Shown here: positions 1 to 61,855 of the stretch, piece after piece
Layout: each line of letters opens with the position of its first letter
How positions within the stretch are numbered: position 1 is the stretch's first letter
IMG/VR virus record: IMGVR_UViG_3300017917_001996
Coordinates: 62,001 to 126,000 of that record
Length of the DNA stretch: 64,000 nucleotides
Reading direction: 5' to 3' (one strand)
Translations under genes and position numbers: made by a program
Notes under the pieces: generated by a model
Told to the model about the DNA's origin: nothing
Database searches by the model: none
Seen by the model: only the letters and a program-made list of their open reading frames with translations

Positions 1-1
1 T

Positions 2-73
2 GGTGTATTTAAATCCGATCCTGCTGTGCGTAACGAGTTTATGAACATTGTTAATGCTTGTAAAACAAAATAA
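2..73 (+). CDS. folE: GTP cyclohydrolase I, C-terminal end (gene starts before the window)
   Basis: Frame 2 reads GVFKSDPAVRNEFMNIVNACKTK*, matching the FolE C-terminal G.F..D...R.EF motif; queD and queE lie downstream. Confidence 0.75.
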   Translation, partial: GVFKSDPAVRNEFMNIVNACKTK

Positions 74-74
74 G

Positions 75-680
75 TTATCTACCTAAAAACTTATAATCGT
101 ATCTCTTTTTAAGTAGATACGGTGTAGTGTTAAAATGTCGTGATGCGGCTCCTATAGTAGGAAAGGTTATGCCTTCGACTACTATAGGGCGAACATTAGG
201 ATTGTTATTATTTTGACTCATCCTTTTTCGCTGTGCTGGATCTTTCATTGGATTGTTTTCTACCATGCGTTTACGAACTTGTTCAATAATTTCTGGTGTA
301 GAAAAAATGTTATCTTTCCCTCTTTTGTAAGATCCTCGGGCTTTACGAGTAGCAGACATCTTAACATACGATTCCGGAGTGCAGTATATTTGTGGGGTTG
401 GACACTTGGAAGTATCATACTTGGCATTAAACAATTTATAGGCATACATCATTCTGTATCGGTTTGCACCCTTAACCATTTCAATTAACAGTCTATGACA
501 TACTCTGTGTTCTTTGTAGGTAAGCACCACAAGATTACTCGGATCATCTGTGCCGCCAAATGACCGTGGAATGATGTGATGCGTTTGAAATCCATCATTT
601 CGTTCTTTAAGGTGATTACGCTGAATAGAACGATTGATTATTCTATAATAAACCTTGGTGTATTTGTTATCTAAAAACAT
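75..680 (-). mobile_element. Free-standing HNH homing endonuclease
   Basis: HHIIPRSFGGTDDPSNLVVLTYKEHRVCH is an HNH motif; basic C-terminal DNA-binding region; opposite strand to neighbours; TAAATA late-promoter motif on the - strand at 715-720. Confidence 0.85.
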
Positions 681-741
681 TGACTCTTCCTATATGATAT
701 GTTAAACTTAAATATATTTATCAAAATGGATGTTGTGACAA

Positions 742-855
742 ATGAATAAACTTACACAAACCACTGTACTGCACGGCGCATTCCGTACTGATCCAAGCGT
801 TAAAAAAGAGTTTATGGACAATATTAAGCTACAGCAAGACTGGGCTCCACGTTAA
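742..855 (+). pseudogene. folE: Orphan second folE 3' fragment
   Basis: Reads MNKLTQTTVLHGAFRTDPSVKKEFMDNIKLQQDWAPR*, a FolE C-terminus distinct from the one at 2-73; not in the ORF track; no Shine-Dalgarno evident. Confidence 0.7.
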
Positions 856-871
856 TTAGAAAGGACTTAAC

Positions 872-1549
872 ATGACCGCTATTGTTTATCGAGGTGCTGC
901 TGCTATTAACCAAGCCATGGGCCGTGTCTATGGACACATGGCTGCGGCTATTTTTACCAGCATGGTTATTAGTTATCTAGTAGGAACTTCCGCTGCATTG
1001 ATGGAATTTTTCTTTACTGGATTTACCAAGTGGGTTGTAATCTTTGCACCCTTGGCATTTATATTTTTAGTTCCTATTTTGCTCAATGCAGGACTTCCTA
1101 AAATCGGTAAGGTGCTGACCTTGCACGCCTTTGCTGGCCTTATGGGCTTGAGCTTTGCCACTATCTTTGCAGTCTACACCATGGGCAGTATTGTTAGTGC
1201 ATTTATGAGTGGTGCCGTGTTGTTTGGGGTTATGAGCTTGTATGGTTACTTTACCAAGCAGAGCCTAGACAGCCTTGGCAAGTATTTGCTAGTAGGCCTA
1301 ATTGCAATTATCATTGCCAGCATTATCAATATCTTTGTTGGCAGCACTGTAGCACAAATGGTAATCAGCGCCATTGCTATTCTTATCTTCCTGGGCCTTA
1401 CTGCCTACGATACACAACAAATTAGAGAAATGGTAATGACTGACTCCGACGACAGTGTTGAGATTTCTGGTGCGCTAACTTTGTATCTGGATTTCATTAA
1501 CTTGTTCCTGAGTCTGCTGCAACTATTCGGAAATAAAAAGGATGATTAA
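872..1549 (+). CDS. Bax inhibitor-1/YccA family membrane protein
   Basis: About seven hydrophobic segments; GLTAYDTQ and GALTLYLDFINLFLSLLQL motifs typical of BI-1/YccA; SD AAGGA. Confidence 0.9.
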   Translation: MTAIVYRGAAAINQAMGRVYGHMAAAIFTSMVISYLVGTSAALMEFFFTGFTKWVVIFAPLAFIFLVPILLNAGLPKIGKVLTLHAFAGLMGLSFATIFAVYTMGSIVSAFMSGAVLFGVMSLYGYFTKQSLDSLGKYLLVGLIAIIIASIINIFVGSTVAQMVISAIAILIFLGLTAYDTQQIREMVMTDSDDSVEISGALTLYLDFINLFLSLLQLFGNKKDD

Positions 1550-1551
1550 AA

Positions 1552-1764
1552 ATGACTAAAAATAAACCAGCGATTAACAAGATCAGCGACAAGCTAACCA
1601 AAGTTGGCGATTCATTTACAGTAACCATGTATGACAATGGTTTTATGTTTGAGATCGGCGGACGTAACGAAAACGACGACTGGTCAAATGCCCGTTTGAT
1701 TTGCTCTAACCTAGACGATCTTGTTACACTAATAATGGAAGCTATCGAAGCTGAAAGAGATTAA
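1552..1764 (+). CDS. Hypothetical protein
   Basis: 70-aa ORF tightly packed in the operon. Confidence 0.7.
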   Translation: MTKNKPAINKISDKLTKVGDSFTVTMYDNGFMFEIGGRNENDDWSNARLICSNLDDLVTLIMEAIEAERD

Positions 1765-1766
1765 CT

Positions 1767-2186
1767 ATGGCACTTTGGACTATATGCCCATCTGAAACAT
1801 ATCGAGCTGTAACCGAAATACAGCTATGGAAAAAATTTGATTACGAGTTAATCAGAGAAGAAACATACGATTGGGCTGAGTTTGAAGTTAATTCAGATAC
1901 CGAACCCATGGTTAACTTAAAAAACGATTACGGTTATAAAGTTAACCATGATCCAAACTATAGTTGGAGTTTAACACAATTAGTGCAAACAAGACCCGAA
2001 CCAACTATTAAATGGACGTATCCAGCCAGCATGTCCGAAGGGCAAGTTTATAACTTAAAAAATCTAATTGAACAAAATGGTTATGTTGGATTAGATTCCG
2101 AAGGTTGGGAACTAGTTAACACAGATTTTTGGTTCTGGGGACCTTTGAGTATTGCACAGGCTGTTAACAATCCACCAGGAGAATAA
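1767..2186 (+). CDS. Hypothetical protein (paralogue of 2189-2617)
   Basis: Shares W..I..E / IREE..W / D.....LKN..G / GW...T..W..GPL pattern with the next ORF. Confidence 0.75.
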   Translation: MALWTICPSETYRAVTEIQLWKKFDYELIREETYDWAEFEVNSDTEPMVNLKNDYGYKVNHDPNYSWSLTQLVQTRPEPTIKWTYPASMSEGQVYNLKNLIEQNGYVGLDSEGWELVNTDFWFWGPLSIAQAVNNPPGE

Positions 2187-2188
2187 AC

Positions 2189-2617
2189 TTGGCCACTTGG
2201 AAAATTTCAAACTATCACAAAAAGAACGCCGTTGAACGTCAGTACTGGCACAAAGACGGTAAAACGATAATTCGCGAAGAAGGGTTTCGCTGGGGGACCT
2301 GGTATTGCGAAAGTGATACTAAGCCCGATGTTGACTTAAAGAACCCCGACGGTTTCGAAGTTAGTTGGACTGAAGATTACGAATGGGAAATGGAAATGAT
2401 GGACGATGGTTGCTGGGGCAACCTAGAAGCCGGAAAAAACACTACCGATGAAGACCTAGAAGAATTCGAGTCAGCGTGGGAAGAAGACAGTTACGAAGGC
2501 GTCGAAGCATTGGGTTGGACTAATGACGATACTGAGTATTGGTTGTACGGTCCTTTAGAATTAACTAACGTGGATACCGGCGAATCATGGAATGGAGATG
2601 ATAATGACAACAACTAA
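2189..2617 (+). CDS. Acidic hypothetical protein (paralogue of 1767-2186)
   Basis: Starts TTG; same motif pattern as the previous ORF; D/E-rich. Confidence 0.75.
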   Translation: MATWKISNYHKKNAVERQYWHKDGKTIIREEGFRWGTWYCESDTKPDVDLKNPDGFEVSWTEDYEWEMEMMDDGCWGNLEAGKNTTDEDLEEFESAWEEDSYEGVEALGWTNDDTEYWLYGPLELTNVDTGESWNGDDNDNN

Positions 2618-2891
2618 AAAGAAATCAACAACTACCAAGACAGCAAAAGTCAGCAACGAAACATGGCCTAAAGTGGTCAAGGGTAGTCACTTAACTGTTA
2701 CTACACACGAAGACGGCCGCACTGAACTTGAATGGGACGATGAACAACTGTTAAAAGAAGTTCAAGAAGCCATTGCTAGTGTAAAACCAGTTAAGCCAGC
2801 AGTAAAAGCTAAATCAGTTAAAAAGGTTCCAGAAGCAATGAAGCGTAAGGAAACTAAACCCAAAGCTGCTACTAAGAAAGCTAAATCATGA
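2604..2891 (+). CDS. Lys/Ala-rich basic protein, possibly DNA-binding
   Basis: ATG 2604 with GGAG SD; C-terminus VKPVKPAVKAKSVKK...KPKAATKKAKS resembles histone H1-like tails. Confidence 0.6.
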   Translation: MTTTKKKSTTTKTAKVSNETWPKVVKGSHLTVTTHEDGRTELEWDDEQLLKEVQEAIASVKPVKPAVKAKSVKKVPEAMKRKETKPKAATKKAKS

Positions 2892-3358
2892 AATGGTTCT
2901 TAAATACATTAGAACGCCTAGGGCGCAAACGTATTGTAATGGACAGGATTAACAATGAACCTTATTTGGAACGCTATTATCTATTCCTCAAGGACCGAAC
3001 ATGGTTTCCCTTTAATGTGTTCCTTCATCGGTTTCTTAAGTCAGATCCCGATGATGTGCATGATCATCCATGGCCTTACGCTACTTTAATTCTTAAAGGT
3101 GGCTACTGGGAATGGATTCCACAGTTTAATAGTCAAGGAGAAAAAATTGGCGAAATCGCAAAATGGCGCGGGGCGGGAAGTTTTCGTACTTGTGGCGCTA
3201 CTAGCTATCATCGTATTGAGCTTGATCCTAGCATAGAGTGTTGGACATTGTTTATGCCAGGGCCGCAACGTCGAGAATGGGGATTCCTGGTCAATAATAA
3301 ATGGGTACAACACGAACAGTACCTAGAATCGAGAAAACATGTATATAACTCTAACTAA
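2888..3358 (+). CDS. Cupin-fold (RmlC-like) protein
   Basis: DDVHDHPW...ILKGGYWE...YHRIEL...WTLF metal-binding cupin motifs. Confidence 0.75.
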   Translation: MKWFLNTLERLGRKRIVMDRINNEPYLERYYLFLKDRTWFPFNVFLHRFLKSDPDDVHDHPWPYATLILKGGYWEWIPQFNSQGEKIGEIAKWRGAGSFRTCGATSYHRIELDPSIECWTLFMPGPQRREWGFLVNNKWVQHEQYLESRKHVYNSN

Positions 3359-3575
3359 TGCTACCGAACAACATCGCGGTAATAAAATTGCTATCAATGC
3401 TGATTTAATTGCCACAGTGCATAGTAAATTTCTTACTAACAATGATGGCATCATTGAAAACATAACTTATATCTTTTGTCCGCCGCACGGTACATGGGAA
3501 GTAAGCGAACCACTAGAAACTGTTGTAGGTATCTTAAATGGTTTTGATAACAAGACTCAGACCGATAGTGCTTGA
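3339..3575 (+). CDS. Hypothetical protein, weak FlbD/SwrD-like pattern
   Basis: I.LT...I.INADLI..V...V.E.LETVV pattern recalls FlbD family proteins; by eye only. Confidence 0.45.
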   Translation: MYITLTNATEQHRGNKIAINADLIATVHSKFLTNNDGIIENITYIFCPPHGTWEVSEPLETVVGILNGFDNKTQTDSA

Positions 3576-3846
3576 GATTAGGGGGCTAACCGATGAGATG
3601 ATCCAGTGGTATCGTTCCATCGGTGGTAAGTCCTTTACTCAAGAACATTGGGACTATCGCGGCAATCGAAAAGAATTAACCTTTGTTGGTTACGGCAATG
3701 GTAAATACTGTCACTATCGCAAAGATGGTACTGGTGGTGTTCGACTACACTTCAACGAAGAAGATGCAAAAATAGCAACCATGTTTATATTGCAATTTCC
3801 AGATGAAGTCGAAGCTCATAATATGGTTAAAGAACACTTTGAATAA
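3538..3846 (+). CDS. Hypothetical protein
   Basis: Open frame filling the operon gap; true start uncertain. Confidence 0.6.
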   Translation: MVLITRLRPIVLEIRGLTDEMIQWYRSIGGKSFTQEHWDYRGNRKELTFVGYGNGKYCHYRKDGTGGVRLHFNEEDAKIATMFILQFPDEVEAHNMVKEHFE

Positions 3847-3881
3847 GCGGCAACACCCCGCTAATTATAATAAATAAACGT

Positions 3882-4439
3882 ATGAAGAAACTCTATCTAT
3901 ACGTTAAACAACACAAAGTAACTGGGTTAAAATATTTTGGTATGACTGCTACAAAAGATCCATATGTGTACACCGGCTCTGGAAAATACTGGAGAAGACA
4001 CCTTAAAATTTACGGCAAAGATATAGATACGGTCAACGTCTGGGAGTTTACAGATCCGTTAGCTTGCGAAAAATTTGCACTAGATTTTTCGGAAAAAAAT
4101 AAAATCGTTGAATCATCAGATTGGGCAAATTTAAGGCCAGAAAACGGAAAAGACGGAAAGGTGCCTGGTAGTCCGGGCATGAAAAAGGAAAAAAATCCAA
4201 ACTGGGGCAAAATTAAAGAGCAAAATTCGTTTTATGGTAAAAAGCACACATCAGAGACCATTGAACTGTACAGACAACAAAAATTAGGGGGCAATAATCC
4301 TCGTGCTAAAAAAGTCACTACACCGTCAGGCAAATACAATTGTCTAAACGATGCAGCCAAGGCAGAATGTATTAATAGAGATACCCTCAGATCTAAATTA
4401 AACAATAATTTTCCTGGCTATCATTGGGGATGGCTCTAA
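3882..4439 (+). mobile_element. Free-standing GIY-YIG (Seg-like) homing endonuclease
   Basis: LYLYVKQHKVTGLKYFG...Y.GSG.YW N-terminus; NUMOD3-like NPNWGK / NSFYGKKHTSETI repeats; own TAAATA motif at 3871-3876. Confidence 0.85.
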
Positions 4440-4518: not shown

Positions 4519-5016
4519 ATGCAACCTGTAGTTTACAAATATACTAGCACAAAAGAATACCACGATGCGTTTCCTTGTGCATATCGCCAATGGCGTGCTG
4601 ATAGTCACTGCAACCTAATTCACGGTTACAGTTTTAGCATGAAGTTTTACTTTGGCACCAACGATTTAGACATTCGTAATTGGGCCGCTGACTATGGCGG
4701 TCTTAAAGAACTCAAGAAAATTTTAGAAGATCAATTTGATCATACCTTGATTGTGGCACAAGACGATCCAGAGATGGAAACATTTAAACTGCTACAAGAA
4801 AAGAAAATGGCCAAGATTGTTGTACTACCACGTCTAGGCTGCGAAGGTCTTAGCGACATGCTGTACAAATTTGTCAATGGTGTTTACATTCCACAGTACT
4901 GGGGACCAGGCGAAGCAGAACGTCTATGGTGCTACCGTGTAGAAGTACGTGAAACACAGGCCAATATGGCTTTCCGCGAAGGACATCGCGAGTGGAATGA
5001 GGATTTATTTGCATGA
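4519..5016 (+). CDS. queD: 6-carboxy-5,6,7,8-tetrahydropterin synthase
   Basis: C..R.W...SHC..IHGYS and DHT..V motifs plus C-terminal V.V.ET of the PTPS/QueD family. Confidence 0.9.
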   Translation: MQPVVYKYTSTKEYHDAFPCAYRQWRADSHCNLIHGYSFSMKFYFGTNDLDIRNWAADYGGLKELKKILEDQFDHTLIVAQDDPEMETFKLLQEKKMAKIVVLPRLGCEGLSDMLYKFVNGVYIPQYWGPGEAERLWCYRVEVRETQANMAFREGHREWNEDLFA

Positions 5017-5351
5017 GCAAACTAAGATATAATATCAATAATATCGGCGGCGAAATTATCAAAGATAACGAAACCTATGTGCTACAAGACAATAAACTGC
5101 TAAAAGATCTTGTAGTCAGTAGCACATTCCTAAAGCCTAATCAAAGCACACGAGGTCACAACCATCCCGGTCAAGAAGAAGTTTATTATTTTGTTTCCGG
5201 ATCAGGTCGTATGCAGATTGACGATGAGGTCTTTGATGTAAAAGACGGTAGTGTCGTGCTGATACCCGATGGAGTGTTTCATAGGGTTTTTAACCCAACC
5301 GAAAAGCCATTGTACTTTGTCTGTGTATTTAACGGTCAGAGAAACCATTGA
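5013..5351 (+). CDS. Cupin_2 domain protein
   Basis: GHNHPGQEEVYYFVSGSG...LIPDGVFHRVFN cupin motifs. Confidence 0.85.
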   Translation: MSKLRYNINNIGGEIIKDNETYVLQDNKLLKDLVVSSTFLKPNQSTRGHNHPGQEEVYYFVSGSGRMQIDDEVFDVKDGSVVLIPDGVFHRVFNPTEKPLYFVCVFNGQRNH

Positions 5352-5376
5352 CTCTGTATTTCAAACATTCTATAAT
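5348..5376 (+). promoter_or_regulatory. Sigma70-type promoter, probably leaderless
   Basis: TTGACT-N17-TATAAT; ATG at 5383 follows the -10 after 6 nt. Confidence 0.8.
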
Positions 5377-5382
5377 ATCAAA

Positions 5383-5673
5383 ATGAATAATAAACAAAAT
5401 GAAATTCTTTTAATTACACAAGAGGAGTGCGCCGAGGTAACACAGGCTATTAGCAAGTGTTACCGATTCGGCTTAGACAATTACAAGCCTGGCAAACCAA
5501 AAACTAATAGAGAACACCTAGCCGAAGAGTTAGGAGATCTTCTAGCCATGGTCACACTGTGTCATGACTTTGGTCTAGTAGACTTTCACGAAGTCATGAC
5601 AGCCAAGGATGCTAAACTAGAAAAGCTACGTCAATGGTCAAATATTTTCAAGGTCGAAAATGAGCAAAATTAA
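5383..5673 (+). CDS. MazG-like nucleotide pyrophosphohydrolase
   Basis: QEECAEV...EELGDLLAM acidic motifs of the MazG/NTP-PPase fold; start reassigned to ATG 5383 after the promoter. Confidence 0.75.
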   Translation: MNNKQNEILLITQEECAEVTQAISKCYRFGLDNYKPGKPKTNREHLAEELGDLLAMVTLCHDFGLVDFHEVMTAKDAKLEKLRQWSNIFKVENEQN

Positions 5674-6517
5674 AATCGCAGAACTGTTTTACAGTATTCA
5701 AGGCGAAGGACGTTACATGGGCGTCCCTAGTGTGTTCTTACGCACATTTGGTTGTAACTTTACCTGTTCAGGCTTTGGTATGCCTGCTGGTGAAAAGAGC
5801 GCCGAGGTAAATGAAATTGTTTCAAGGGCACATTACTTCAAGGACTACAAAGAACTACCTTTGGTGTCTACAGGATGCGACAGCTACGCCAGTTGGCATC
5901 CTGCATTTAAAGATTTAAGCCCTATGCTAACTTCTGACGCTATTGTAGATCGCATCATGGAAATTATTCCATACAACGAGTGGCGCGACGAACATCTCGT
6001 AATCACAGGCGGTGAACCATTACTAGGTTGGCAACGTGCTTACCCAGATATGCTTGATCATCCTAAAATGCAAAGTCTAAAAGAAATTACCTTTGAGACC
6101 AATGGCACTCAAGAACTTAGTAAAGAGTTTAGACAATATCTTTTGAACTGGACCCTGGGCCGCAAGGATCGTGGATATCAAGCACTTACATTTAGTGTCA
6201 GCGCAAAGTTGCCTTGCAGTGGCGAAACTTGGGAAGATGCTATTAGACCCGACATTGTGTTAAGTTATCAGGATGTCGGTCATACCTATCTTAAATTTGT
6301 TGTAGCTACAGAACAAGATGTTGCCGACGCACTCCGTGCTACTGAAGAATTTCGCAGTGCAGGCTTCAACGGTAATGTATATCTAATGCCAGTTGGTGGC
6401 GTTGAAAGCGTGTACTCTCTAAACAACAGAGCGGTTGCCTTGCTAGCCATGAAGCACGGTCTACGCTATAGTGATAGACTTCAGGTTCCGCTTTTTAAGA
6501 ACGAGTGGGGAACTTAA
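5660..6517 (+). CDS. queE: 7-carboxy-7-deazaguanine synthase (radical SAM)
   Basis: ELFYSIQGEG...PSVFLR.FGCN, ITGGEPLL, FETNGT, S.RLQV.L motifs; cysteines spaced CX3CX36C. Confidence 0.9.
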   Translation: MSKIKIAELFYSIQGEGRYMGVPSVFLRTFGCNFTCSGFGMPAGEKSAEVNEIVSRAHYFKDYKELPLVSTGCDSYASWHPAFKDLSPMLTSDAIVDRIMEIIPYNEWRDEHLVITGGEPLLGWQRAYPDMLDHPKMQSLKEITFETNGTQELSKEFRQYLLNWTLGRKDRGYQALTFSVSAKLPCSGETWEDAIRPDIVLSYQDVGHTYLKFVVATEQDVADALRATEEFRSAGFNGNVYLMPVGGVESVYSLNNRAVALLAMKHGLRYSDRLQVPLFKNEWGT

Positions 6518-59092: not shown

Positions 59093-61855
59093 ATGGCCGA
59101 TATTGATTATGATTTATTAGCTGAAAAGCTAGCCGACGCAGTAGTTAAAGCTATGAACACATCTTCTGCGGCCAAAGACAGGGCCGCAATCTTAGACAAA
59201 GAAGACCGTGCTCGCGCTACTTCTATTGCAGAAACACTAAAATTAACCAAAGCAATCAAAGATGCAGGCAGTGCATCTTCGGCTTTTAAACGGGTACTGT
59301 TAAATCAACAAGCTAGTTATCTTGATGTAGAAAAGACTCTAGAGAAACTAGACGAAGAAATTGAAAACGATAAAGAAGCACTTAAAAAGCTAGGCGAAGC
59401 TGCCGATGGTGCAGCCGCTGCTTCTAAGCATTTTGAGCTACAGCAAAAAATACAAGATAGGGCACAACAGGCTGCTAATATAAAGTTAGCTAATTTCTAC
59501 AATGCGCTGTCTAATGCATCTTTAGGTGCAATTAAATTCTCCGATAGCATTGCAACATCTGCTTTTACAGCTGGCGGCTCGTTAGTTAAAGGATTAATGC
59601 GCGGCTCGTCAGCAGTCGAAACATCATCTGCTCTAATGAGCGCCGGCGTCGATTTGGCCAAGGACGCTGCAACAGGTGTTGCGTCAGCATTACAAGGACT
59701 TGGTACAGCCGCTTTAGTACTACCAGGTAAGTTCAAAGCCCTTGGAGTGGGCTTATTAGGATTAGGAACAGTAGTTGGATATACGTCTGATAAACTTGCA
59801 AAATTAGTCAAATTTGGTATAGACATACTTGGCGCTGAACTTGAAAAAACCATCGAAGCCTATAGGAAAACTAATCAAGCAGGTGCGTTATTTGCAGATG
59901 GCATGACAGGAATGCGTAATGCTGCTTACGAAGCCGGACTTACACTTAGCCAATTTGCTAACGTATTAACCAAAGCCAGTCCGGATTTAGCAGCAGTGGG
60001 TATGGGTGTTACCGAAGGCTCTAAGCGCATGGGCGGAGCTATTGCAGCTGGCGGCAGCGCAATGAAAAACCAATTACTAAACTTAGGATATTCGTTTGAA
60101 GAACAAGCAGGTTTAGTTGCTGAAACTATGGCCTTAATGCGCCAGTCCGGTGGACCACTAACAGCTAGTAATCAAGTTGTTGCACAAGAAACACTCAAGT
60201 ATGCAGAAAACTTACGTGTAATTAGTGCCATTACAGGTGAAGATGCAAGAAAGAAAGCTGATCAAGTACGTCAACAAGCTAACCAATTAGCCTTCCAACA
60301 AAAACTTGCAGGCATGGACGAAACACAAAGAATGGGTGTTATTAAAGCCATGCAAAACATGAGCGACCTAGAGCGTCGTAACTTCATGGACATGGTTAAC
60401 TTTGGTACTGTTATTAACAAAGAAGGTGCGGCTGCTGCGGCAATGAGTGGCGGACTTACTAATGCAGTTAACAGTTACTACCAAGCGTTTAGGTCTGGTA
60501 CTTTAGATGAACTTAGTGCAAGAAAGATTTCTGCACAAAACGCTGAACAACAGAAAAAAGATTATTTAGGACTTACTGATATTGCTACTGCACAAGCAGC
60601 CGGAATTGGTGGGCTAGCTGGCATGCTAGGTGAAATACTTGGTAGAGAACTAGAATATAGGAACAAAGCAACTGCTGAAGCTATTGCAGCCAGCGAACAA
60701 TTAGCAGCCAAACAAAAAGTAACCAACGATGGATTAACACAATCTGTTAATCAAACTGCAATTACAGTACAACAGTTGCAGATGGTCTTAGAAAAAGAAT
60801 TACTAGGATCAATATCGTTGTATGCAAACTCAGTTAAGGAAATGAATAAGTTAATCCTTACAGCGATTGAAGATCTAAGAAAATCGCAAGGTGCAGGTGG
60901 TGCTACCGCAGAAGAGCCTAGTTTGATAAAAAAGATAGGAAGAGAAGCCACAGGGTTAGCTACTGGCCTTGGGGCAGGTGCTTTAACATTATTGGGCGGC
61001 GGTGCTGCCACTATTGCAACTGGTGGTGCAGCAGCAATTCCAACAATATTAGGAACGGGTGCAGCAGCATACACAGGACGCGAGCTTGGATTAGAACTTT
61101 TTGATCGACTCGATGCATGGTTTGGTAAAAAAGAAGGTAAACGCAAAGGTGGAGTTGTCAGAGAAGGATCTAGTTCTGGCGTACTTGAAAAGCTACACCC
61201 ACCAGAGGCGGTGGTTCCTTTGCCAGATGGACGCAGCATACCTGTTACCATTAGCATGTTAAATTCTGCGTACAAAACTGATGTGCCAACACCGGATACA
61301 TCATTAGCAGATGCTTTTACTGATATAAGCGGTGCATTATCTGCAACAATTAAAGATTTGCGTTCAATGGCCGCTGATTTGTTTACCGGCGCAGCAGCAA
61401 CACTAAAATTAATCGGTGACCAACAAGCCAATGCATTACAAGATAGAACACCAAATGCTTTTGAAATGGTGCAGTTAAAAGAACTGACTGTTAGCCGTAC
61501 TATAAGCGAGTACCTAGAACCACAGCTAAATTCACTAGAGGTAAGCAAGAACATGCTAACTGAATTTAGACAAGGAATCGATACTAACCTAGCTGATCTT
61601 AAAGCAGAAGTTAAGAGATTAGCTGACGGGGCAGTTAAGCCTGCGGCACCCGAAGCGGAACCAAAGCCGCAATCAACAGCAGCAGAAGTTAACATAATTG
61701 TAGATCAACTCAGAGTCTCTAATAGAGATCTTAAAGAGACTTTGTTGGTACAAAATAAACTTCTAGAAGAAAGTGTAAAAACAATACAAGATTTATTAAG
61801 TGTATCCAGTGACACCCGAAATTACAGTCAAGCTATCGTACATAACACTCTATAA
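59093..61855 (+). CDS. Tail tape measure protein
   Basis: 920-aa Ala/Gly/Leu-rich helical protein; EKLHPPEAVVPLPDGRSIPV motif; between the hub chaperone and the portal. Confidence 0.8.
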   Translation: MADIDYDLLAEKLADAVVKAMNTSSAAKDRAAILDKEDRARATSIAETLKLTKAIKDAGSASSAFKRVLLNQQASYLDVEKTLEKLDEEIENDKEALKKLGEAADGAAAASKHFELQQKIQDRAQQAANIKLANFYNALSNASLGAIKFSDSIATSAFTAGGSLVKGLMRGSSAVETSSALMSAGVDLAKDAATGVASALQGLGTAALVLPGKFKALGVGLLGLGTVVGYTSDKLAKLVKFGIDILGAELEKTIEAYRKTNQAGALFADGMTGMRNAAYEAGLTLSQFANVLTKASPDLAAVGMGVTEGSKRMGGAIAAGGSAMKNQLLNLGYSFEEQAGLVAETMALMRQSGGPLTASNQVVAQETLKYAENLRVISAITGEDARKKADQVRQQANQLAFQQKLAGMDETQRMGVIKAMQNMSDLERRNFMDMVNFGTVINKEGAAAAAMSGGLTNAVNSYYQAFRSGTLDELSARKISAQNAEQQKKDYLGLTDIATAQAAGIGGLAGMLGEILGRELEYRNKATAEAIAASEQLAAKQKVTNDGLTQSVNQTAITVQQLQMVLEKELLGSISLYANSVKEMNKLILTAIEDLRKSQGAGGATAEEPSLIKKIGREATGLATGLGAGALTLLGGGAATIATGGAAAIPTILGTGAAAYTGRELGLELFDRLDAWFGKKEGKRKGGVVREGSSSGVLEKLHPPEAVVPLPDGRSIPVTISMLNSAYKTDVPTPDTSLADAFTDISGALSATIKDLRSMAADLFTGAAATLKLIGDQQANALQDRTPNAFEMVQLKELTVSRTISEYLEPQLNSLEVSKNMLTEFRQGIDTNLADLKAEVKRLADGAVKPAAPEAEPKPQSTAAEVNIIVDQLRVSNRDLKETLLVQNKLLEESVKTIQDLLSVSSDTRNYSQAIVHNTL

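What the first reader, a model, noticed from the sequence alone, without database searches (positions are those of the whole stretch)
2..855. Two different folE 3' ends flank an HNH homing endonuclease: probable gene-end replacement
Seen: the upstream folE ends GVFKSDPAVRNEFMNIVNACKTK* (2-73). Just beyond the inverted HNH gene lies a second, divergent FolE C-terminus, LTQTTVLHGAFRTDPSVKKEFMDNIKLQQDWAPR* (751-855), with no gene body. An out-of-frame GGA TGT TGT (GCC, 728-736) may be a decayed remnant of the upstream HxC motif region. Known: some homing endonucleases keep a target gene functional and cleavage-resistant by carrying a substitute gene end. Inference: the element inserted into folE with a foreign 3' end and stranded the native one.
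Basis: partly seen in the sequence, partly recalled or inferred. Interest (0 to 1): 0.65.

Follow-up and report, generated by a model that had tools for sequence, protein, structure and literature searches.

The report
Homing endonuclease carrying a replacement folE
A selfish HNH nuclease gene in a T4-like phage sits inside the gutted remains of one GTP cyclohydrolase I gene and brings along a complete, distantly related copy of that gene, so the orphan "second folE end" is a relic of the destroyed gene, not of the intact one.

Summary
An intact folE ends at 73, an inverted 201-aa HNH gene lies at 75-680, and a 34-codon FolE C-terminus lies at 751-855 inside an ATG-started ORF (742-855).

The intact gene ("folE-A") is one lineage over its whole length. 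Eighty HNH-less relatives share its 3' end.

A matching 26-codon folE-B 5' end, with its own promoter, lies 760-683 nt upstream of the window. So a folE-B gene has had its interior (about codons 24-185) replaced by [complete folE-A + HNH].

The same composite occurs in at least four other metagenome lineages. Their cargo is similar but their folE-B arms are much more diverged, and one has a filled/empty-site partner.

In the folE-B lineage itself, the HNH's relatives do carry only a substitute 3' end. They show a sharp ancestry switch just 5' of the HGCC motif, and the native end is stranded beyond the HNH.

Verdict: a homing-endonuclease cassette that has moved from gene-end replacement to whole-gene replacement. 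The anatomy is shown; nuclease activity and homing are inferred.

The parts
2..73 (+). Last 23 codons and stop of the intact folE-A gene. The whole gene is G000:C1:61390-62073 = L002:1375-2058, 227 aa. It is the cargo of the composite cassette.
   Evidence: PF01227 positions 1-178 of 179, E 7e-64. Eighty HNH-less relatives at 80-91% aa identity share the same C-terminal type. No ancestry switch along the gene. dN/dS about 0.05 against L220.
75..680 (-). HNH homing endonuclease gene, 201 aa, convergent with folE-A. Its stop codon lies one base from the folE-A stop.
   Evidence: PF01844 above cut-off. phrog_655 'homing endonuclease', E 6e-23. Of 27 relatives at 43-85% identity, 26 lie convergent to a folE gene and one contig is truncated. 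dN/dS 0.07 against L220. 41% identical in the HNH domain to the folE-adjacent HEG of Vibrio phage phi-pp2.
680..727 (.). Conserved spacer of the cassette. It holds the HNH ribosome-binding region (minus strand) and an outward-facing sigma-70-like promoter on the plus strand: TTGACT 680-685, 17-nt spacer, TG-extended TAAACT 703-708.
   Evidence: One search lists the site, though the count in the window alone is not above chance. The hexamers, spacing and TG recur in nearly all cassette copies. The last 50 nt of the spacer-plus-junction stretch (window 701-750) are 100% identical between the window and L220, although flanking synonymous sites are saturated. Function is inferred.
728..750 (+). 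Start of the stranded folE-B 3' relic. GGA TGT TGT is the G-C-C of the H-G-C-C zinc-site motif. It is followed by a short filler that supplies stops in that frame and the ATG at 742.
   Evidence: L102 reads GCCENSGIMAHSSLTQTTVL... without interruption at the same place. L220 has the same GCC, filler and ATG followed by ENRGIMAHSS....
742..855 (+). 37-codon ORF. Codons from 751 on are the native folE-B C-terminus (34 codons and stop). Relative to L220 it carries an in-frame 36-nt deletion.
   Evidence: 83% identity (E 1e-20) to the C-terminus of the intact HNH-less folE-B of L174. 67 of 78 HNH-less folE-B alleles end in the same tail type. In 19 of 20 distinct loci that keep a relic, it is an ATG-started ORF.
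872..1549 (+). Bax1-I family membrane protein gene, the resident gene downstream of folE-B. It marks the end of the cassette and relic; homology between the window and L220 stops at 855.
   Evidence: PF01027, E 5e-49. It follows intact folE-B directly in L155, L166, L180 and L185. The block shared with L220 ends at 855.

Best explanation
The locus is a folE gene of one lineage (folE-B) whose interior has been replaced by a composite homing cassette. The cassette is a complete folE of another lineage (folE-A, about 33% identical, with its own short leader) followed by a convergent HNH homing endonuclease gene and a conserved spacer. What remains of folE-B is a 26-codon 5' end with its promoter (760-683 nt left of the window) and a 3' end starting at the G of the H-G-C-C motif (window 728-855).

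Inferred history:
1. An HNH cassette of the ordinary kind entered folE-B immediately after the His codon of HGCC. It carried a substitute, recoded 3' end and stranded the native one. This stage survives in many relatives.
2. In one lineage, the folE-B body plus the substitute end was exchanged for a whole folE-A module. The junctions fall at the folE-A leader on the left and exactly between the two stop codons on the right.
3. The composite then spread.

Inferred mechanism of spread: the nuclease cuts HNH-less folE-B near the HGCC region. The break is widened and repaired from the donor, using the two folE-B relics and their flanks as homology arms. The recipient loses folE-B and gains folE-A plus HNH. 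folE-A lacks the target, so the new genome is immune and still makes GTP cyclohydrolase I, which here sits in a FolE-QueD-QueE cluster.

The anatomy, the distribution and the ancestry switches are shown. Cleavage specificity, homing and the order of events are inferred.
For: folE-A is native over its whole length:
- Eighty HNH-less relatives share its tail.
- There is no ancestry switch along it.

Both relics belong to folE-B:
- The 3' relic matches the folE-B C-terminus at 83%, E 1e-20.
- The 5' relic matches residues 1-26 of folE-B at 81%, E 2e-14, starting at Met1. Its promoter and SD are visible.
- None of the 80 HNH-less folE-A loci has either relic.

The composite recurs elsewhere:
- The same composite with the same one-base stop-to-stop junction occurs in L220, L221-224, L225 and L219.
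- Filled/empty pair: L221 against HNH-less L138 is collinear on both sides, with 1449 nt in place of 489 nt of folE-B interior.
- Between L220, L221 and L225 the cargo is close (synonymous difference 0.17-0.41 in folE-A and HNH, identical 61-nt spacer), but the 3' arm is far (0.68-0.80). This is expected if the arms come from different recipients.

The HNH family is tied to folE:
- 26 of 27 relatives lie next to folE-B.
- The tail type tracks HNH presence: 22 of 28 against 6 of 78.
- In 9 of 9 loci the stranded tail is nearer to the closest HNH-less allele than the in-gene tail is.
- There are sharp switches just 5' of HGCC.
- Degenerate and lost HNH copies exist (L140, L188).

Other support:
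- HNH and folE-A are under purifying selection.
- HNH presence is patchy inside one well-supported folE-A clade.
- Cultured-phage parallel: phi-pp2 against KVP40 shows an HNH at the folE 3' end, with identity falling from 97-100% to 83% towards it.
Against: - No cleavage, homing or expression data exist.
- The HNH tree does not resolve whether the composite's HNH copies form one clade.
- The folE-A tree needs at least two gains or losses and mixes HNH-bearing with clean alleles. The cargo therefore also recombines with ordinary folE-A genes, or it was captured more than once.
- L220 lacks the 5' relic, and L219 shows none in 484 nt upstream.
- The left junction differs between the window/L221 and L225/L220.
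- These phages are highly mosaic, so ordinary recombination could produce divergent arms without nuclease help.
- Gap repair would have to remove about 490 nt leftwards from the presumed cut site.
Confidence: 0.7

Rival explanations
1. Ordinary modular recombination. A folE-A module and an HNH gene came to lie inside folE-B relics through the usual mosaic exchange of T4-like phages. The HNH is a passenger or no longer active, and the composite spreads only by descent and general recombination.
For: The gene neighbourhood is highly variable. The left junction sits at a short conserved leader that begins the folE-A module in all contexts. The folE-A tree mixes HNH-bearing and clean alleles. The HNH tree is unresolved.
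Against: The HNH ORF is intact with dN/dS about 0.07-0.25 in all composite copies. The junction preserves both ORFs to the base in every copy. The arms are 2-4 times more diverged at synonymous sites than the cargo. The whole HNH family is bound to folE and shows presence/absence, co-conversion and decay stages typical of active homing elements.
Confidence: 0.2
2. The element inserted into the present upstream folE, brought only a foreign 3' end, and the piece at 751-855 is that gene's own native end.
For: Two FolE C-termini flank the HNH. This mechanism does exist in relatives.
Against: The upstream tail is the lineage-typical tail of 80 HNH-less relatives. The stranded end is 50% identical to it but 83% identical to folE-B tails. 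A folE-B 5' relic lies upstream of the intact gene. No switch is seen inside folE-A.
Confidence: 0.04
3. Decayed tandem paralogue. Two folE genes once stood side by side and the second has rotted to a 3' stub.
For: Two folE-like C-termini lie within 800 nt.
Against: None of more than 240 related loci has two complete folE genes in tandem. The folE-B relics lie on both sides of folE-A, not after it. The empty-site partner has one intact folE-B exactly between the same flanks.
Confidence: 0.03
4. Assembly chimera joining reads of a folE-A phage and a folE-B/HNH phage.
For: Some contigs break at the cassette borders. L005 ends 12 nt past the folE-A stop, and the Logan contig ends near window 869.
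Against: There is an identical independent assembly. Diverged copies of the same junctions occur in unrelated samples.
Confidence: 0.01

Closest known systems
Free-standing HNH (mob-type) homing endonuclease genes of T4-like phages, such as T4 mobE and the folE-adjacent PEG119 of Vibrio phage phi-pp2
   Same: A small HNH ORF lies between or against conserved metabolic genes of a T4-like phage (Gp23 capsid in this genome). It is present or absent between near-identical genomes and has a co-conversion gradient in the neighbouring gene (phi-pp2 against KVP40). The phi-pp2 paper lists PEG119 as a mob-like HEG next to GTP cyclohydrolase I (PMC3468402). mobE homing and trans-mobilisation of neighbours are described in PMC2790892.
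   Different: In those cases the endonuclease sits beside an otherwise continuous homologous gene. Here it lies within the relics of a destroyed gene and is linked to a complete, non-homologous-at-DNA-level replacement gene. Identity to the phi-pp2 protein is only 41%, and only in the HNH domain.
Partial C-terminal gene duplications next to homing endonuclease ORFs in fungal mitochondria (atp6 and cob of Endoconidiophora resinifera, PMC6279837; the Allomyces macrogynus atp6 hybrid gene, recalled from memory)
   Same: An HEG-linked insertion brings a substitute gene end and leaves the native C-terminal segment as a downstream orphan. This is the stage seen in folE-B relatives such as L087 and L109.
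   Different: The genome type is a phage rather than a mitochondrion, and the nuclease is HNH rather than LAGLIDADG or GIY-YIG. In the window the substitute is a whole gene of another lineage, and both ends of the old gene are stranded.
Intronless homing and marker exclusion by T4 SegF/SegG, and the 'HEG islands' or nuclease genes at boundaries of genetic exchange (PMC2988022, PMC10448857)
   Same: A free-standing nuclease promotes co-conversion of flanking DNA, so neighbouring genes hitch-hike. HEGs mark the borders of exchanged blocks.
   Different: Those cases exchange homologous alleles. Here the hitch-hiking cargo replaces a gene only 33% identical in protein, using short relics of the victim as arms.
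Aeromonas phage Aeh1 nrdA split by mobE ('genes in pieces', Friedrich et al. 2007, cited in PMC2988022)
   Same: An HNH HEG is inserted inside an essential nucleotide-metabolism gene of a T4-like phage, and function is retained.
   Different: In Aeh1 the two halves remain functional and reassemble. Here the old gene is destroyed and its function is supplied by the carried gene.

Membership tests
HNH endonuclease superfamily (PF01844) | A beta-beta-alpha-metal HNH motif that scores above the family threshold | tested here: met
   PF01844, 26.0 bits against a cut-off of 21.4, residues 27-62. The His-His...Asn...His pattern is visible in the translation. PDB sequence hits are only generic HNH domains, E 0.03-1.
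Homing endonuclease gene (mobile, free-standing) | Presence/absence polymorphism at one site among otherwise related genomes | tested here: met
   80 folE-A loci and 78 folE-B alleles lack it, while relatives carry it at the same site. Filled/empty pair L221 and L138. Patchy within one folE-A clade.
Homing endonuclease gene (mobile, free-standing) | A co-conversion tract or ancestry switch in the target gene next to the insertion | tested here: met
   L109 against L200: about 97% falling to about 68%, starting 12 codons 5' of HGCC. L140 against L155 and L087 against L137 behave likewise. phi-pp2 against KVP40 shows the same gradient. No switch is seen inside the window's folE-A. There the switch points are the relic borders instead.
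Homing endonuclease gene (mobile, free-standing) | Site-specific cleavage of the element-free allele and resistance of the element-bearing allele | not testable with these tools
   Only indirect evidence. Native alleles are most conserved, and HNH-bearing alleles most recoded, around the HGCC codons: YIQATHGCCEN against YIEAEHGCCTN.
GTP cyclohydrolase I (PF01227), for the piece at 742-855 | Full catalytic domain including the Cys/His zinc site | tested here: not met
   Only profile positions 153-178 of 179 are matched, at 13.9 bits against a cut-off of 27. It is a fragment of a family member, not a member. The genome has one full PF01227 gene.
   Not met in the window. Met in folE-B relatives that carry the related HNH.

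The most novel reading that the evidence does not exclude
The HNH element has captured a complete alternative folE as cargo and now acts as a gene-replacement drive. It destroys folE-B in any co-infecting relative and installs folE-A plus itself, using the two short relics of the victim as homology arms.

In addition, the stranded 3' relic may not be junk. It may be kept as a short translated ORF, fed by the cassette's outward promoter, so that ribosomes still reach the overlapping start (ATGA) of the resident downstream gene.
Probability: 0.4. Interest if true: 0.75.

Novelty: new variant of a known kind. Interest (0 to 1): 0.6.

Why it matters
Homing endonucleases are usually thought to move themselves plus a little homologous flank. 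This natural series shows three things.
- It shows step by step how such an element first protects its host gene with a recoded end and then becomes linked to a whole isofunctional gene of another lineage. This would be a route by which a selfish nuclease could drive non-orthologous gene displacement in phage populations.
- It gives a concrete, testable target (the HGCC-coding region of folE-B) and natural immune alleles.
- It suggests that relic gene ends can be retained for expression of neighbouring genes.

For annotation, it warns that short 'GTP cyclohydrolase I' ORFs of 12-52 aa next to HNH genes are relics, and that the intact gene beside them need not be their parent.

Tried and rejected
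Searches that gave nothing or could not run:
- Megablast of window 1-4000 against cultured phages found no match.
- The 37-aa ORF was too short for the search for related loci and the search for homologous proteins. The 49-aa L220 version was used instead.
I did not try to get it another way.

Analyses that were inconclusive:
- The HNH protein tree left the window, L220 and the nearest folE-B-linked copies in a polytomy, so a single origin of the composite could not be shown.
- dN/dS of stranded tails is 0.09-0.19. I first read this as purifying selection on a peptide. I then rejected it as proof, because the tails are more diverged than the adjacent cargo. They are therefore probably recent captures from functional alleles.
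- The window-only promoter scan is not above chance. The T4 late motif TATAAATA is not enriched in the window. I therefore make no claim about a late promoter for the HNH or folE-A.
- The group-wise identity profile of folE-B alleles was too noisy to place the left border of the substitute tract. The closest pairs did place it.
- The PDB sequence search gave only generic HNH hits.

Steps not taken:
- The large representative search was not needed.

Full report
**Labels.** 'folE-A' is the lineage of the intact gene in this window. 'folE-B' is the lineage to which the orphan piece belongs. Both are PF01227 GTP cyclohydrolase I genes and about 33% identical in protein. These labels are mine and are unrelated to the FolE/FolE2 nomenclature.

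**1. Observation.**
- The window starts inside a gene. Its frame at 2-73 ends ...NEFMNIVNACKTK*.
- A 201-aa ORF runs on the minus strand at 75-680.
- ORF 742-855 reads MNKLTQTTVLHGAF...QQDWAPR*.
- The window is G000:C1:62001-126000 of a 250-kb IMG/VR virus record that encodes a T4-type Gp23 capsid protein.
- Extending leftward, the first gene is a complete 227-aa FolE (L002:1375-2058; PF01227 positions 1-178 of 179, E 7e-64).
- The minus-strand ORF is an HNH endonuclease (PF01844 above cut-off; phrog_655 'homing endonuclease', E 6e-23).
- The 37-aa ORF alone is a weak Pfam hit (E 0.037). It is nevertheless 83% identical (E 1e-20) to the last 36 residues of an intact 228-aa FolE on another contig, and the alignment ends at that protein's C-terminus. 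Against the neighbouring folE it is 50% identical over 22 residues.

**2. The intact gene is not a chimera.**
- A scan of IMG/VR returned 80 loci with folE-A at 80-91% aa identity. None has an HNH or a second FolE tail.
- Their C-termini are of the same type as the window's (...GG(V/C)FK.DP.VR.EFMNIVN.CK..*), and some are identical up to the last two residues.
- DNA identity to the nearest relatives is about 0.75-0.83 in the body and about 0.70-0.80 in the tail, with no step.

**3. Where the HNH and the orphan end come from.**
- Relatives of the HNH protein at 43-85% identity were found on 27 viral contigs. On 26 of them the HNH is convergent to, and usually overlaps by about 25 nt, the 3' end of a folE-B gene. 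One contig is truncated.
- Many of these loci also carry a second folE-B C-terminus on the far side of the HNH.
- A scan with folE-B gave 80 more loci. Of 78 HNH-less alleles, 67 end ...KKEF(F/M)DNIKLQQ(D/E)(F/W)APR*, which is the window's orphan type, and L162 and L174 end QQDWAPR. Of 28 HNH-linked alleles, 22 end in substitute tails (...LQSRNGK* or ...SLQESNKR*).
- In all nine loci with a long stranded tail, that tail is closer to the tail of the nearest-bodied HNH-less allele than the in-gene tail is. In L087 the figures are 93% against 65% in DNA, and the stranded tail is 100% identical in protein to that of L137.
- The closest HNH+/HNH- pairs show sharp ancestry switches. L109 against L200 is about 97% identical for 172 codons and about 68% thereafter. 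L140 against L155 and L087 against L137 behave the same way.
- The switch lies a few to about 15 codons 5' of the H-G-C-C motif. HNH-linked alleles read YIEAEHGCCTN where native ones read YIQATHGCCEN.
- The stranded native copy begins at the G of HGCC (complete in L102).
- Decay stages exist: an internally deleted HNH (L140), and loss of the HNH with a collapsed relic (L188, L194, L108).
The junction is at HGCC, not at TT(V/S).

**4. What the window really is.**
- DNA homology to folE-A relatives runs from window -680 to about +73. Homology to HNH cassettes runs from about 100 to 746. The HNH's last codons are still recognisably cassette sequence, and the two stop codons are one base apart.
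- Immediately left of the folE-A leader lies L002:1225-1302 (G000 61240-61317, window -760 to -683). It encodes 26 residues that are 81% identical (E 2e-14) to residues 1-26 of folE-B, starting at Met1. It is preceded by TTGACT, 17 nt, TACAAT and a GGAG.
- Hence a folE-B gene has kept its promoter, its first 26 codons and its last roughly 47 codons (further damaged in the window). Its interior has been replaced by [folE-A module + HNH + spacer].
- None of the 80 clean folE-A loci has a folE-B 5' relic or a 3' relic.
L220 shows GCC, a 20-nt filler containing the ATG, then ENRGIMAHSSLTQTTVL.... The window has an in-frame 36-nt deletion of the next 12 codons.

**5. The composite recurs and looks mobile.**
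- A degenerate junction pattern hit only the window among viral contigs, but it hit two metagenome contigs.
- Short FolE-tail proteins led to more copies.
- L220, L221-224, L225 and partial L219 all have folE-A, the one-base stop-to-stop junction, a 201-aa HNH and the same spacer. Where the contigs reach that far, they also have a 49-aa relic ORF. L221 and L225 also have the 5' relic.
- L005 is 96% identical to L220 and breaks 12 nt past the stop.
- An independent Logan assembly is identical to the window.
- L221 against HNH-less L138 is collinear through the upstream gene, the promoter and about 22 codons of folE-B, and again from ENRG... into the downstream genes. Between these stretches, 1449 nt stand in place of 489 nt.
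- Between L220, L221 and L225, synonymous differences are 0.17-0.41 in folE-A and HNH, and the 61-nt spacer is identical. In the 3' relic they are 0.68-0.80. Downstream genes also differ.
- This fits arms inherited from different folE-B recipients, that is, repeated homing of [folE-A + HNH] into folE-B.
- HNH and folE-A are under purifying selection (dN/dS 0.05-0.25).
- In the folE-A tree the HNH-bearing alleles fall in one 99/99-supported clade of 14 together with ten clean alleles. This needs at least two gains or losses. L219 loses identity to its clean sister towards the junction.

**6. Mechanism (inferred).**
- The nuclease recognises the conserved HGCC-coding region of native folE-B. Native alleles are most conserved there and HNH-linked alleles most recoded.
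- After cleavage in a mixed infection, the gap is repaired from the donor.
- With the older cassette this converts the 3' end.
- With the composite, the only homology to the left of the cut is the 5' relic and its promoter. The whole interior is therefore replaced by folE-A plus HNH.
- folE-A has no target, so the product is immune and still supplies FolE.
- FolE here heads a cluster with a QueD-like PTPS gene (4519-5016) and a QueE-like radical-SAM gene (5660-6517).
- How folE-A was first joined to the HNH is unknown. The junctions, at the start of the folE-A leader and exactly between the two stops, suggest illegitimate recombination filtered by the need to keep both ORFs.

**7. The relic as an ORF.**
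- In 19 of 20 distinct loci that retain any native tail, the tail is an ATG-started in-frame ORF of 12-52 aa. This holds even after large internal deletions.
- In 15 of these loci its TGA overlaps the ATG of the next gene. Several have a GGAG 5-8 nt before the ATG.
- The spacer carries a conserved plus-strand TTGAC(T/A), 17 nt, TG-extended -10 pointing at the relic.
- I propose, without proof, that translation of the relic is kept in order to preserve coupled expression of the resident downstream gene.
- In the window the next gene (Bax1-I, 872) starts 16 nt after the relic's TAA and has its own SD, so the argument is weaker here.
- Low dN/dS of the tails cannot be used as evidence for this idea.

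**8. Comparison with known systems.**
- The closest cultured case is Vibrio phage phi-pp2. It has an HNH HEG overlapping the folE 3' end that is absent from KVP40, and the genomes' identity falls from 97-100% to 83% towards it. That paper lists the gene as mob-like, next to GTP cyclohydrolase I (PMC3468402).
- HEG-linked C-terminal duplications are known in fungal mitochondria (PMC6279837).
- Hitch-hiking of flanks and HEGs at exchange borders are known in phages (PMC2790892, PMC2988022, PMC10448857).
- My searches of the open literature found no phage example of a stranded gene end, or of a whole replacement gene linked to an HEG. That is absence in a limited library, not proof of novelty.

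**9. Verdict.** The locus is a new variant of a known kind: a free-standing HNH homing cassette that carries a complete substitute gene inside the relics of its target.

Noticed in passing
G000:C1:61240-61320 (window -760 to -680; L002:1225-1305): A stranded 26-codon 5' end of folE-B lies just upstream of the intact folE-A, outside the window. It has its own TTGACT-17-TACAAT promoter and GGAG. It is the left-hand counterpart of the orphan 3' end.
   Followed up: yes
window 680-708 (+), and the same place in L085-L111, L220-L225: An outward-facing sigma-70-like promoter (TTGACT, 17 nt, TG-extended TAAACT/TATAAT) overlaps the HNH start codon. It is conserved in nearly all cassette copies and points at the relic and the downstream genes.
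   Followed up: partly
L087:2708-2950(-), and L101, L110, L111, L140: A small ORF of about 80 aa, ending ...HFGVEE* with an ATGA overlap, has been inserted inside the stranded folE-B tail, between the GCC remnant and TTVL. L091, L097 and L106 have different small ORFs at the same spot. No family hit was found in PHROGs.
   Followed up: partly
window 3882-4439 (+): A second putative homing endonuclease gene (phrog_314, E 7e-8; no Pfam hit) lies about 3 kb downstream, between small ORFs and the QueD-like gene.
   Followed up: partly
window 4519-6517 (+): A QueD-like PTPS gene (4519-5016), a cupin, MazG (5269-5673) and a QueE-like radical-SAM gene (5660-6517) follow. Together with folE this looks like a 7-deazaguanine precursor cluster, which would make folE a valuable target for a selfish element.
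   Followed up: partly
window 872-1549 (+): A Bax1-I (BI-1/YccA-like) membrane protein gene in a phage. It is present in many relatives but at shifting positions around folE.
   Followed up: no
L188:3678-3830, L194, L108: These folE-B alleles have the substitute ...RNG(K/N)* tail. In L188 and L194 the HNH is gone; L108 still has it. The native tail has collapsed in frame to a 23-aa ORF (M-I-K-L-K-.-GCCKNSGIKLQQEFAPR*). This is a late stage of the element's life cycle.
   Followed up: partly
L003 (phi-pp2) against L004 (KVP40), locus positions 2700-3170: Two cultured Vibrio phages are 97-100% identical elsewhere. Identity drops to 83%, then 55%, over the last 170 nt of folE next to the phi-pp2 HNH gene, and returns to 99% beyond it. 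This is a textbook co-conversion tract.
   Followed up: yes
L005 end; L218 end (window about 869): Two assemblies break within a few bases of the cassette borders. This may reflect mixed filled and empty alleles in the sampled populations.
   Followed up: no
window 69-115: A 13-bp imperfect inverted repeat (ATCTACCTAAAAA / TTTTTAAGTAGAT) spans the HNH C-terminal codons right after the folE-A stop. It may be a weak bidirectional terminator. The terminator scan did not call it.
   Followed up: no
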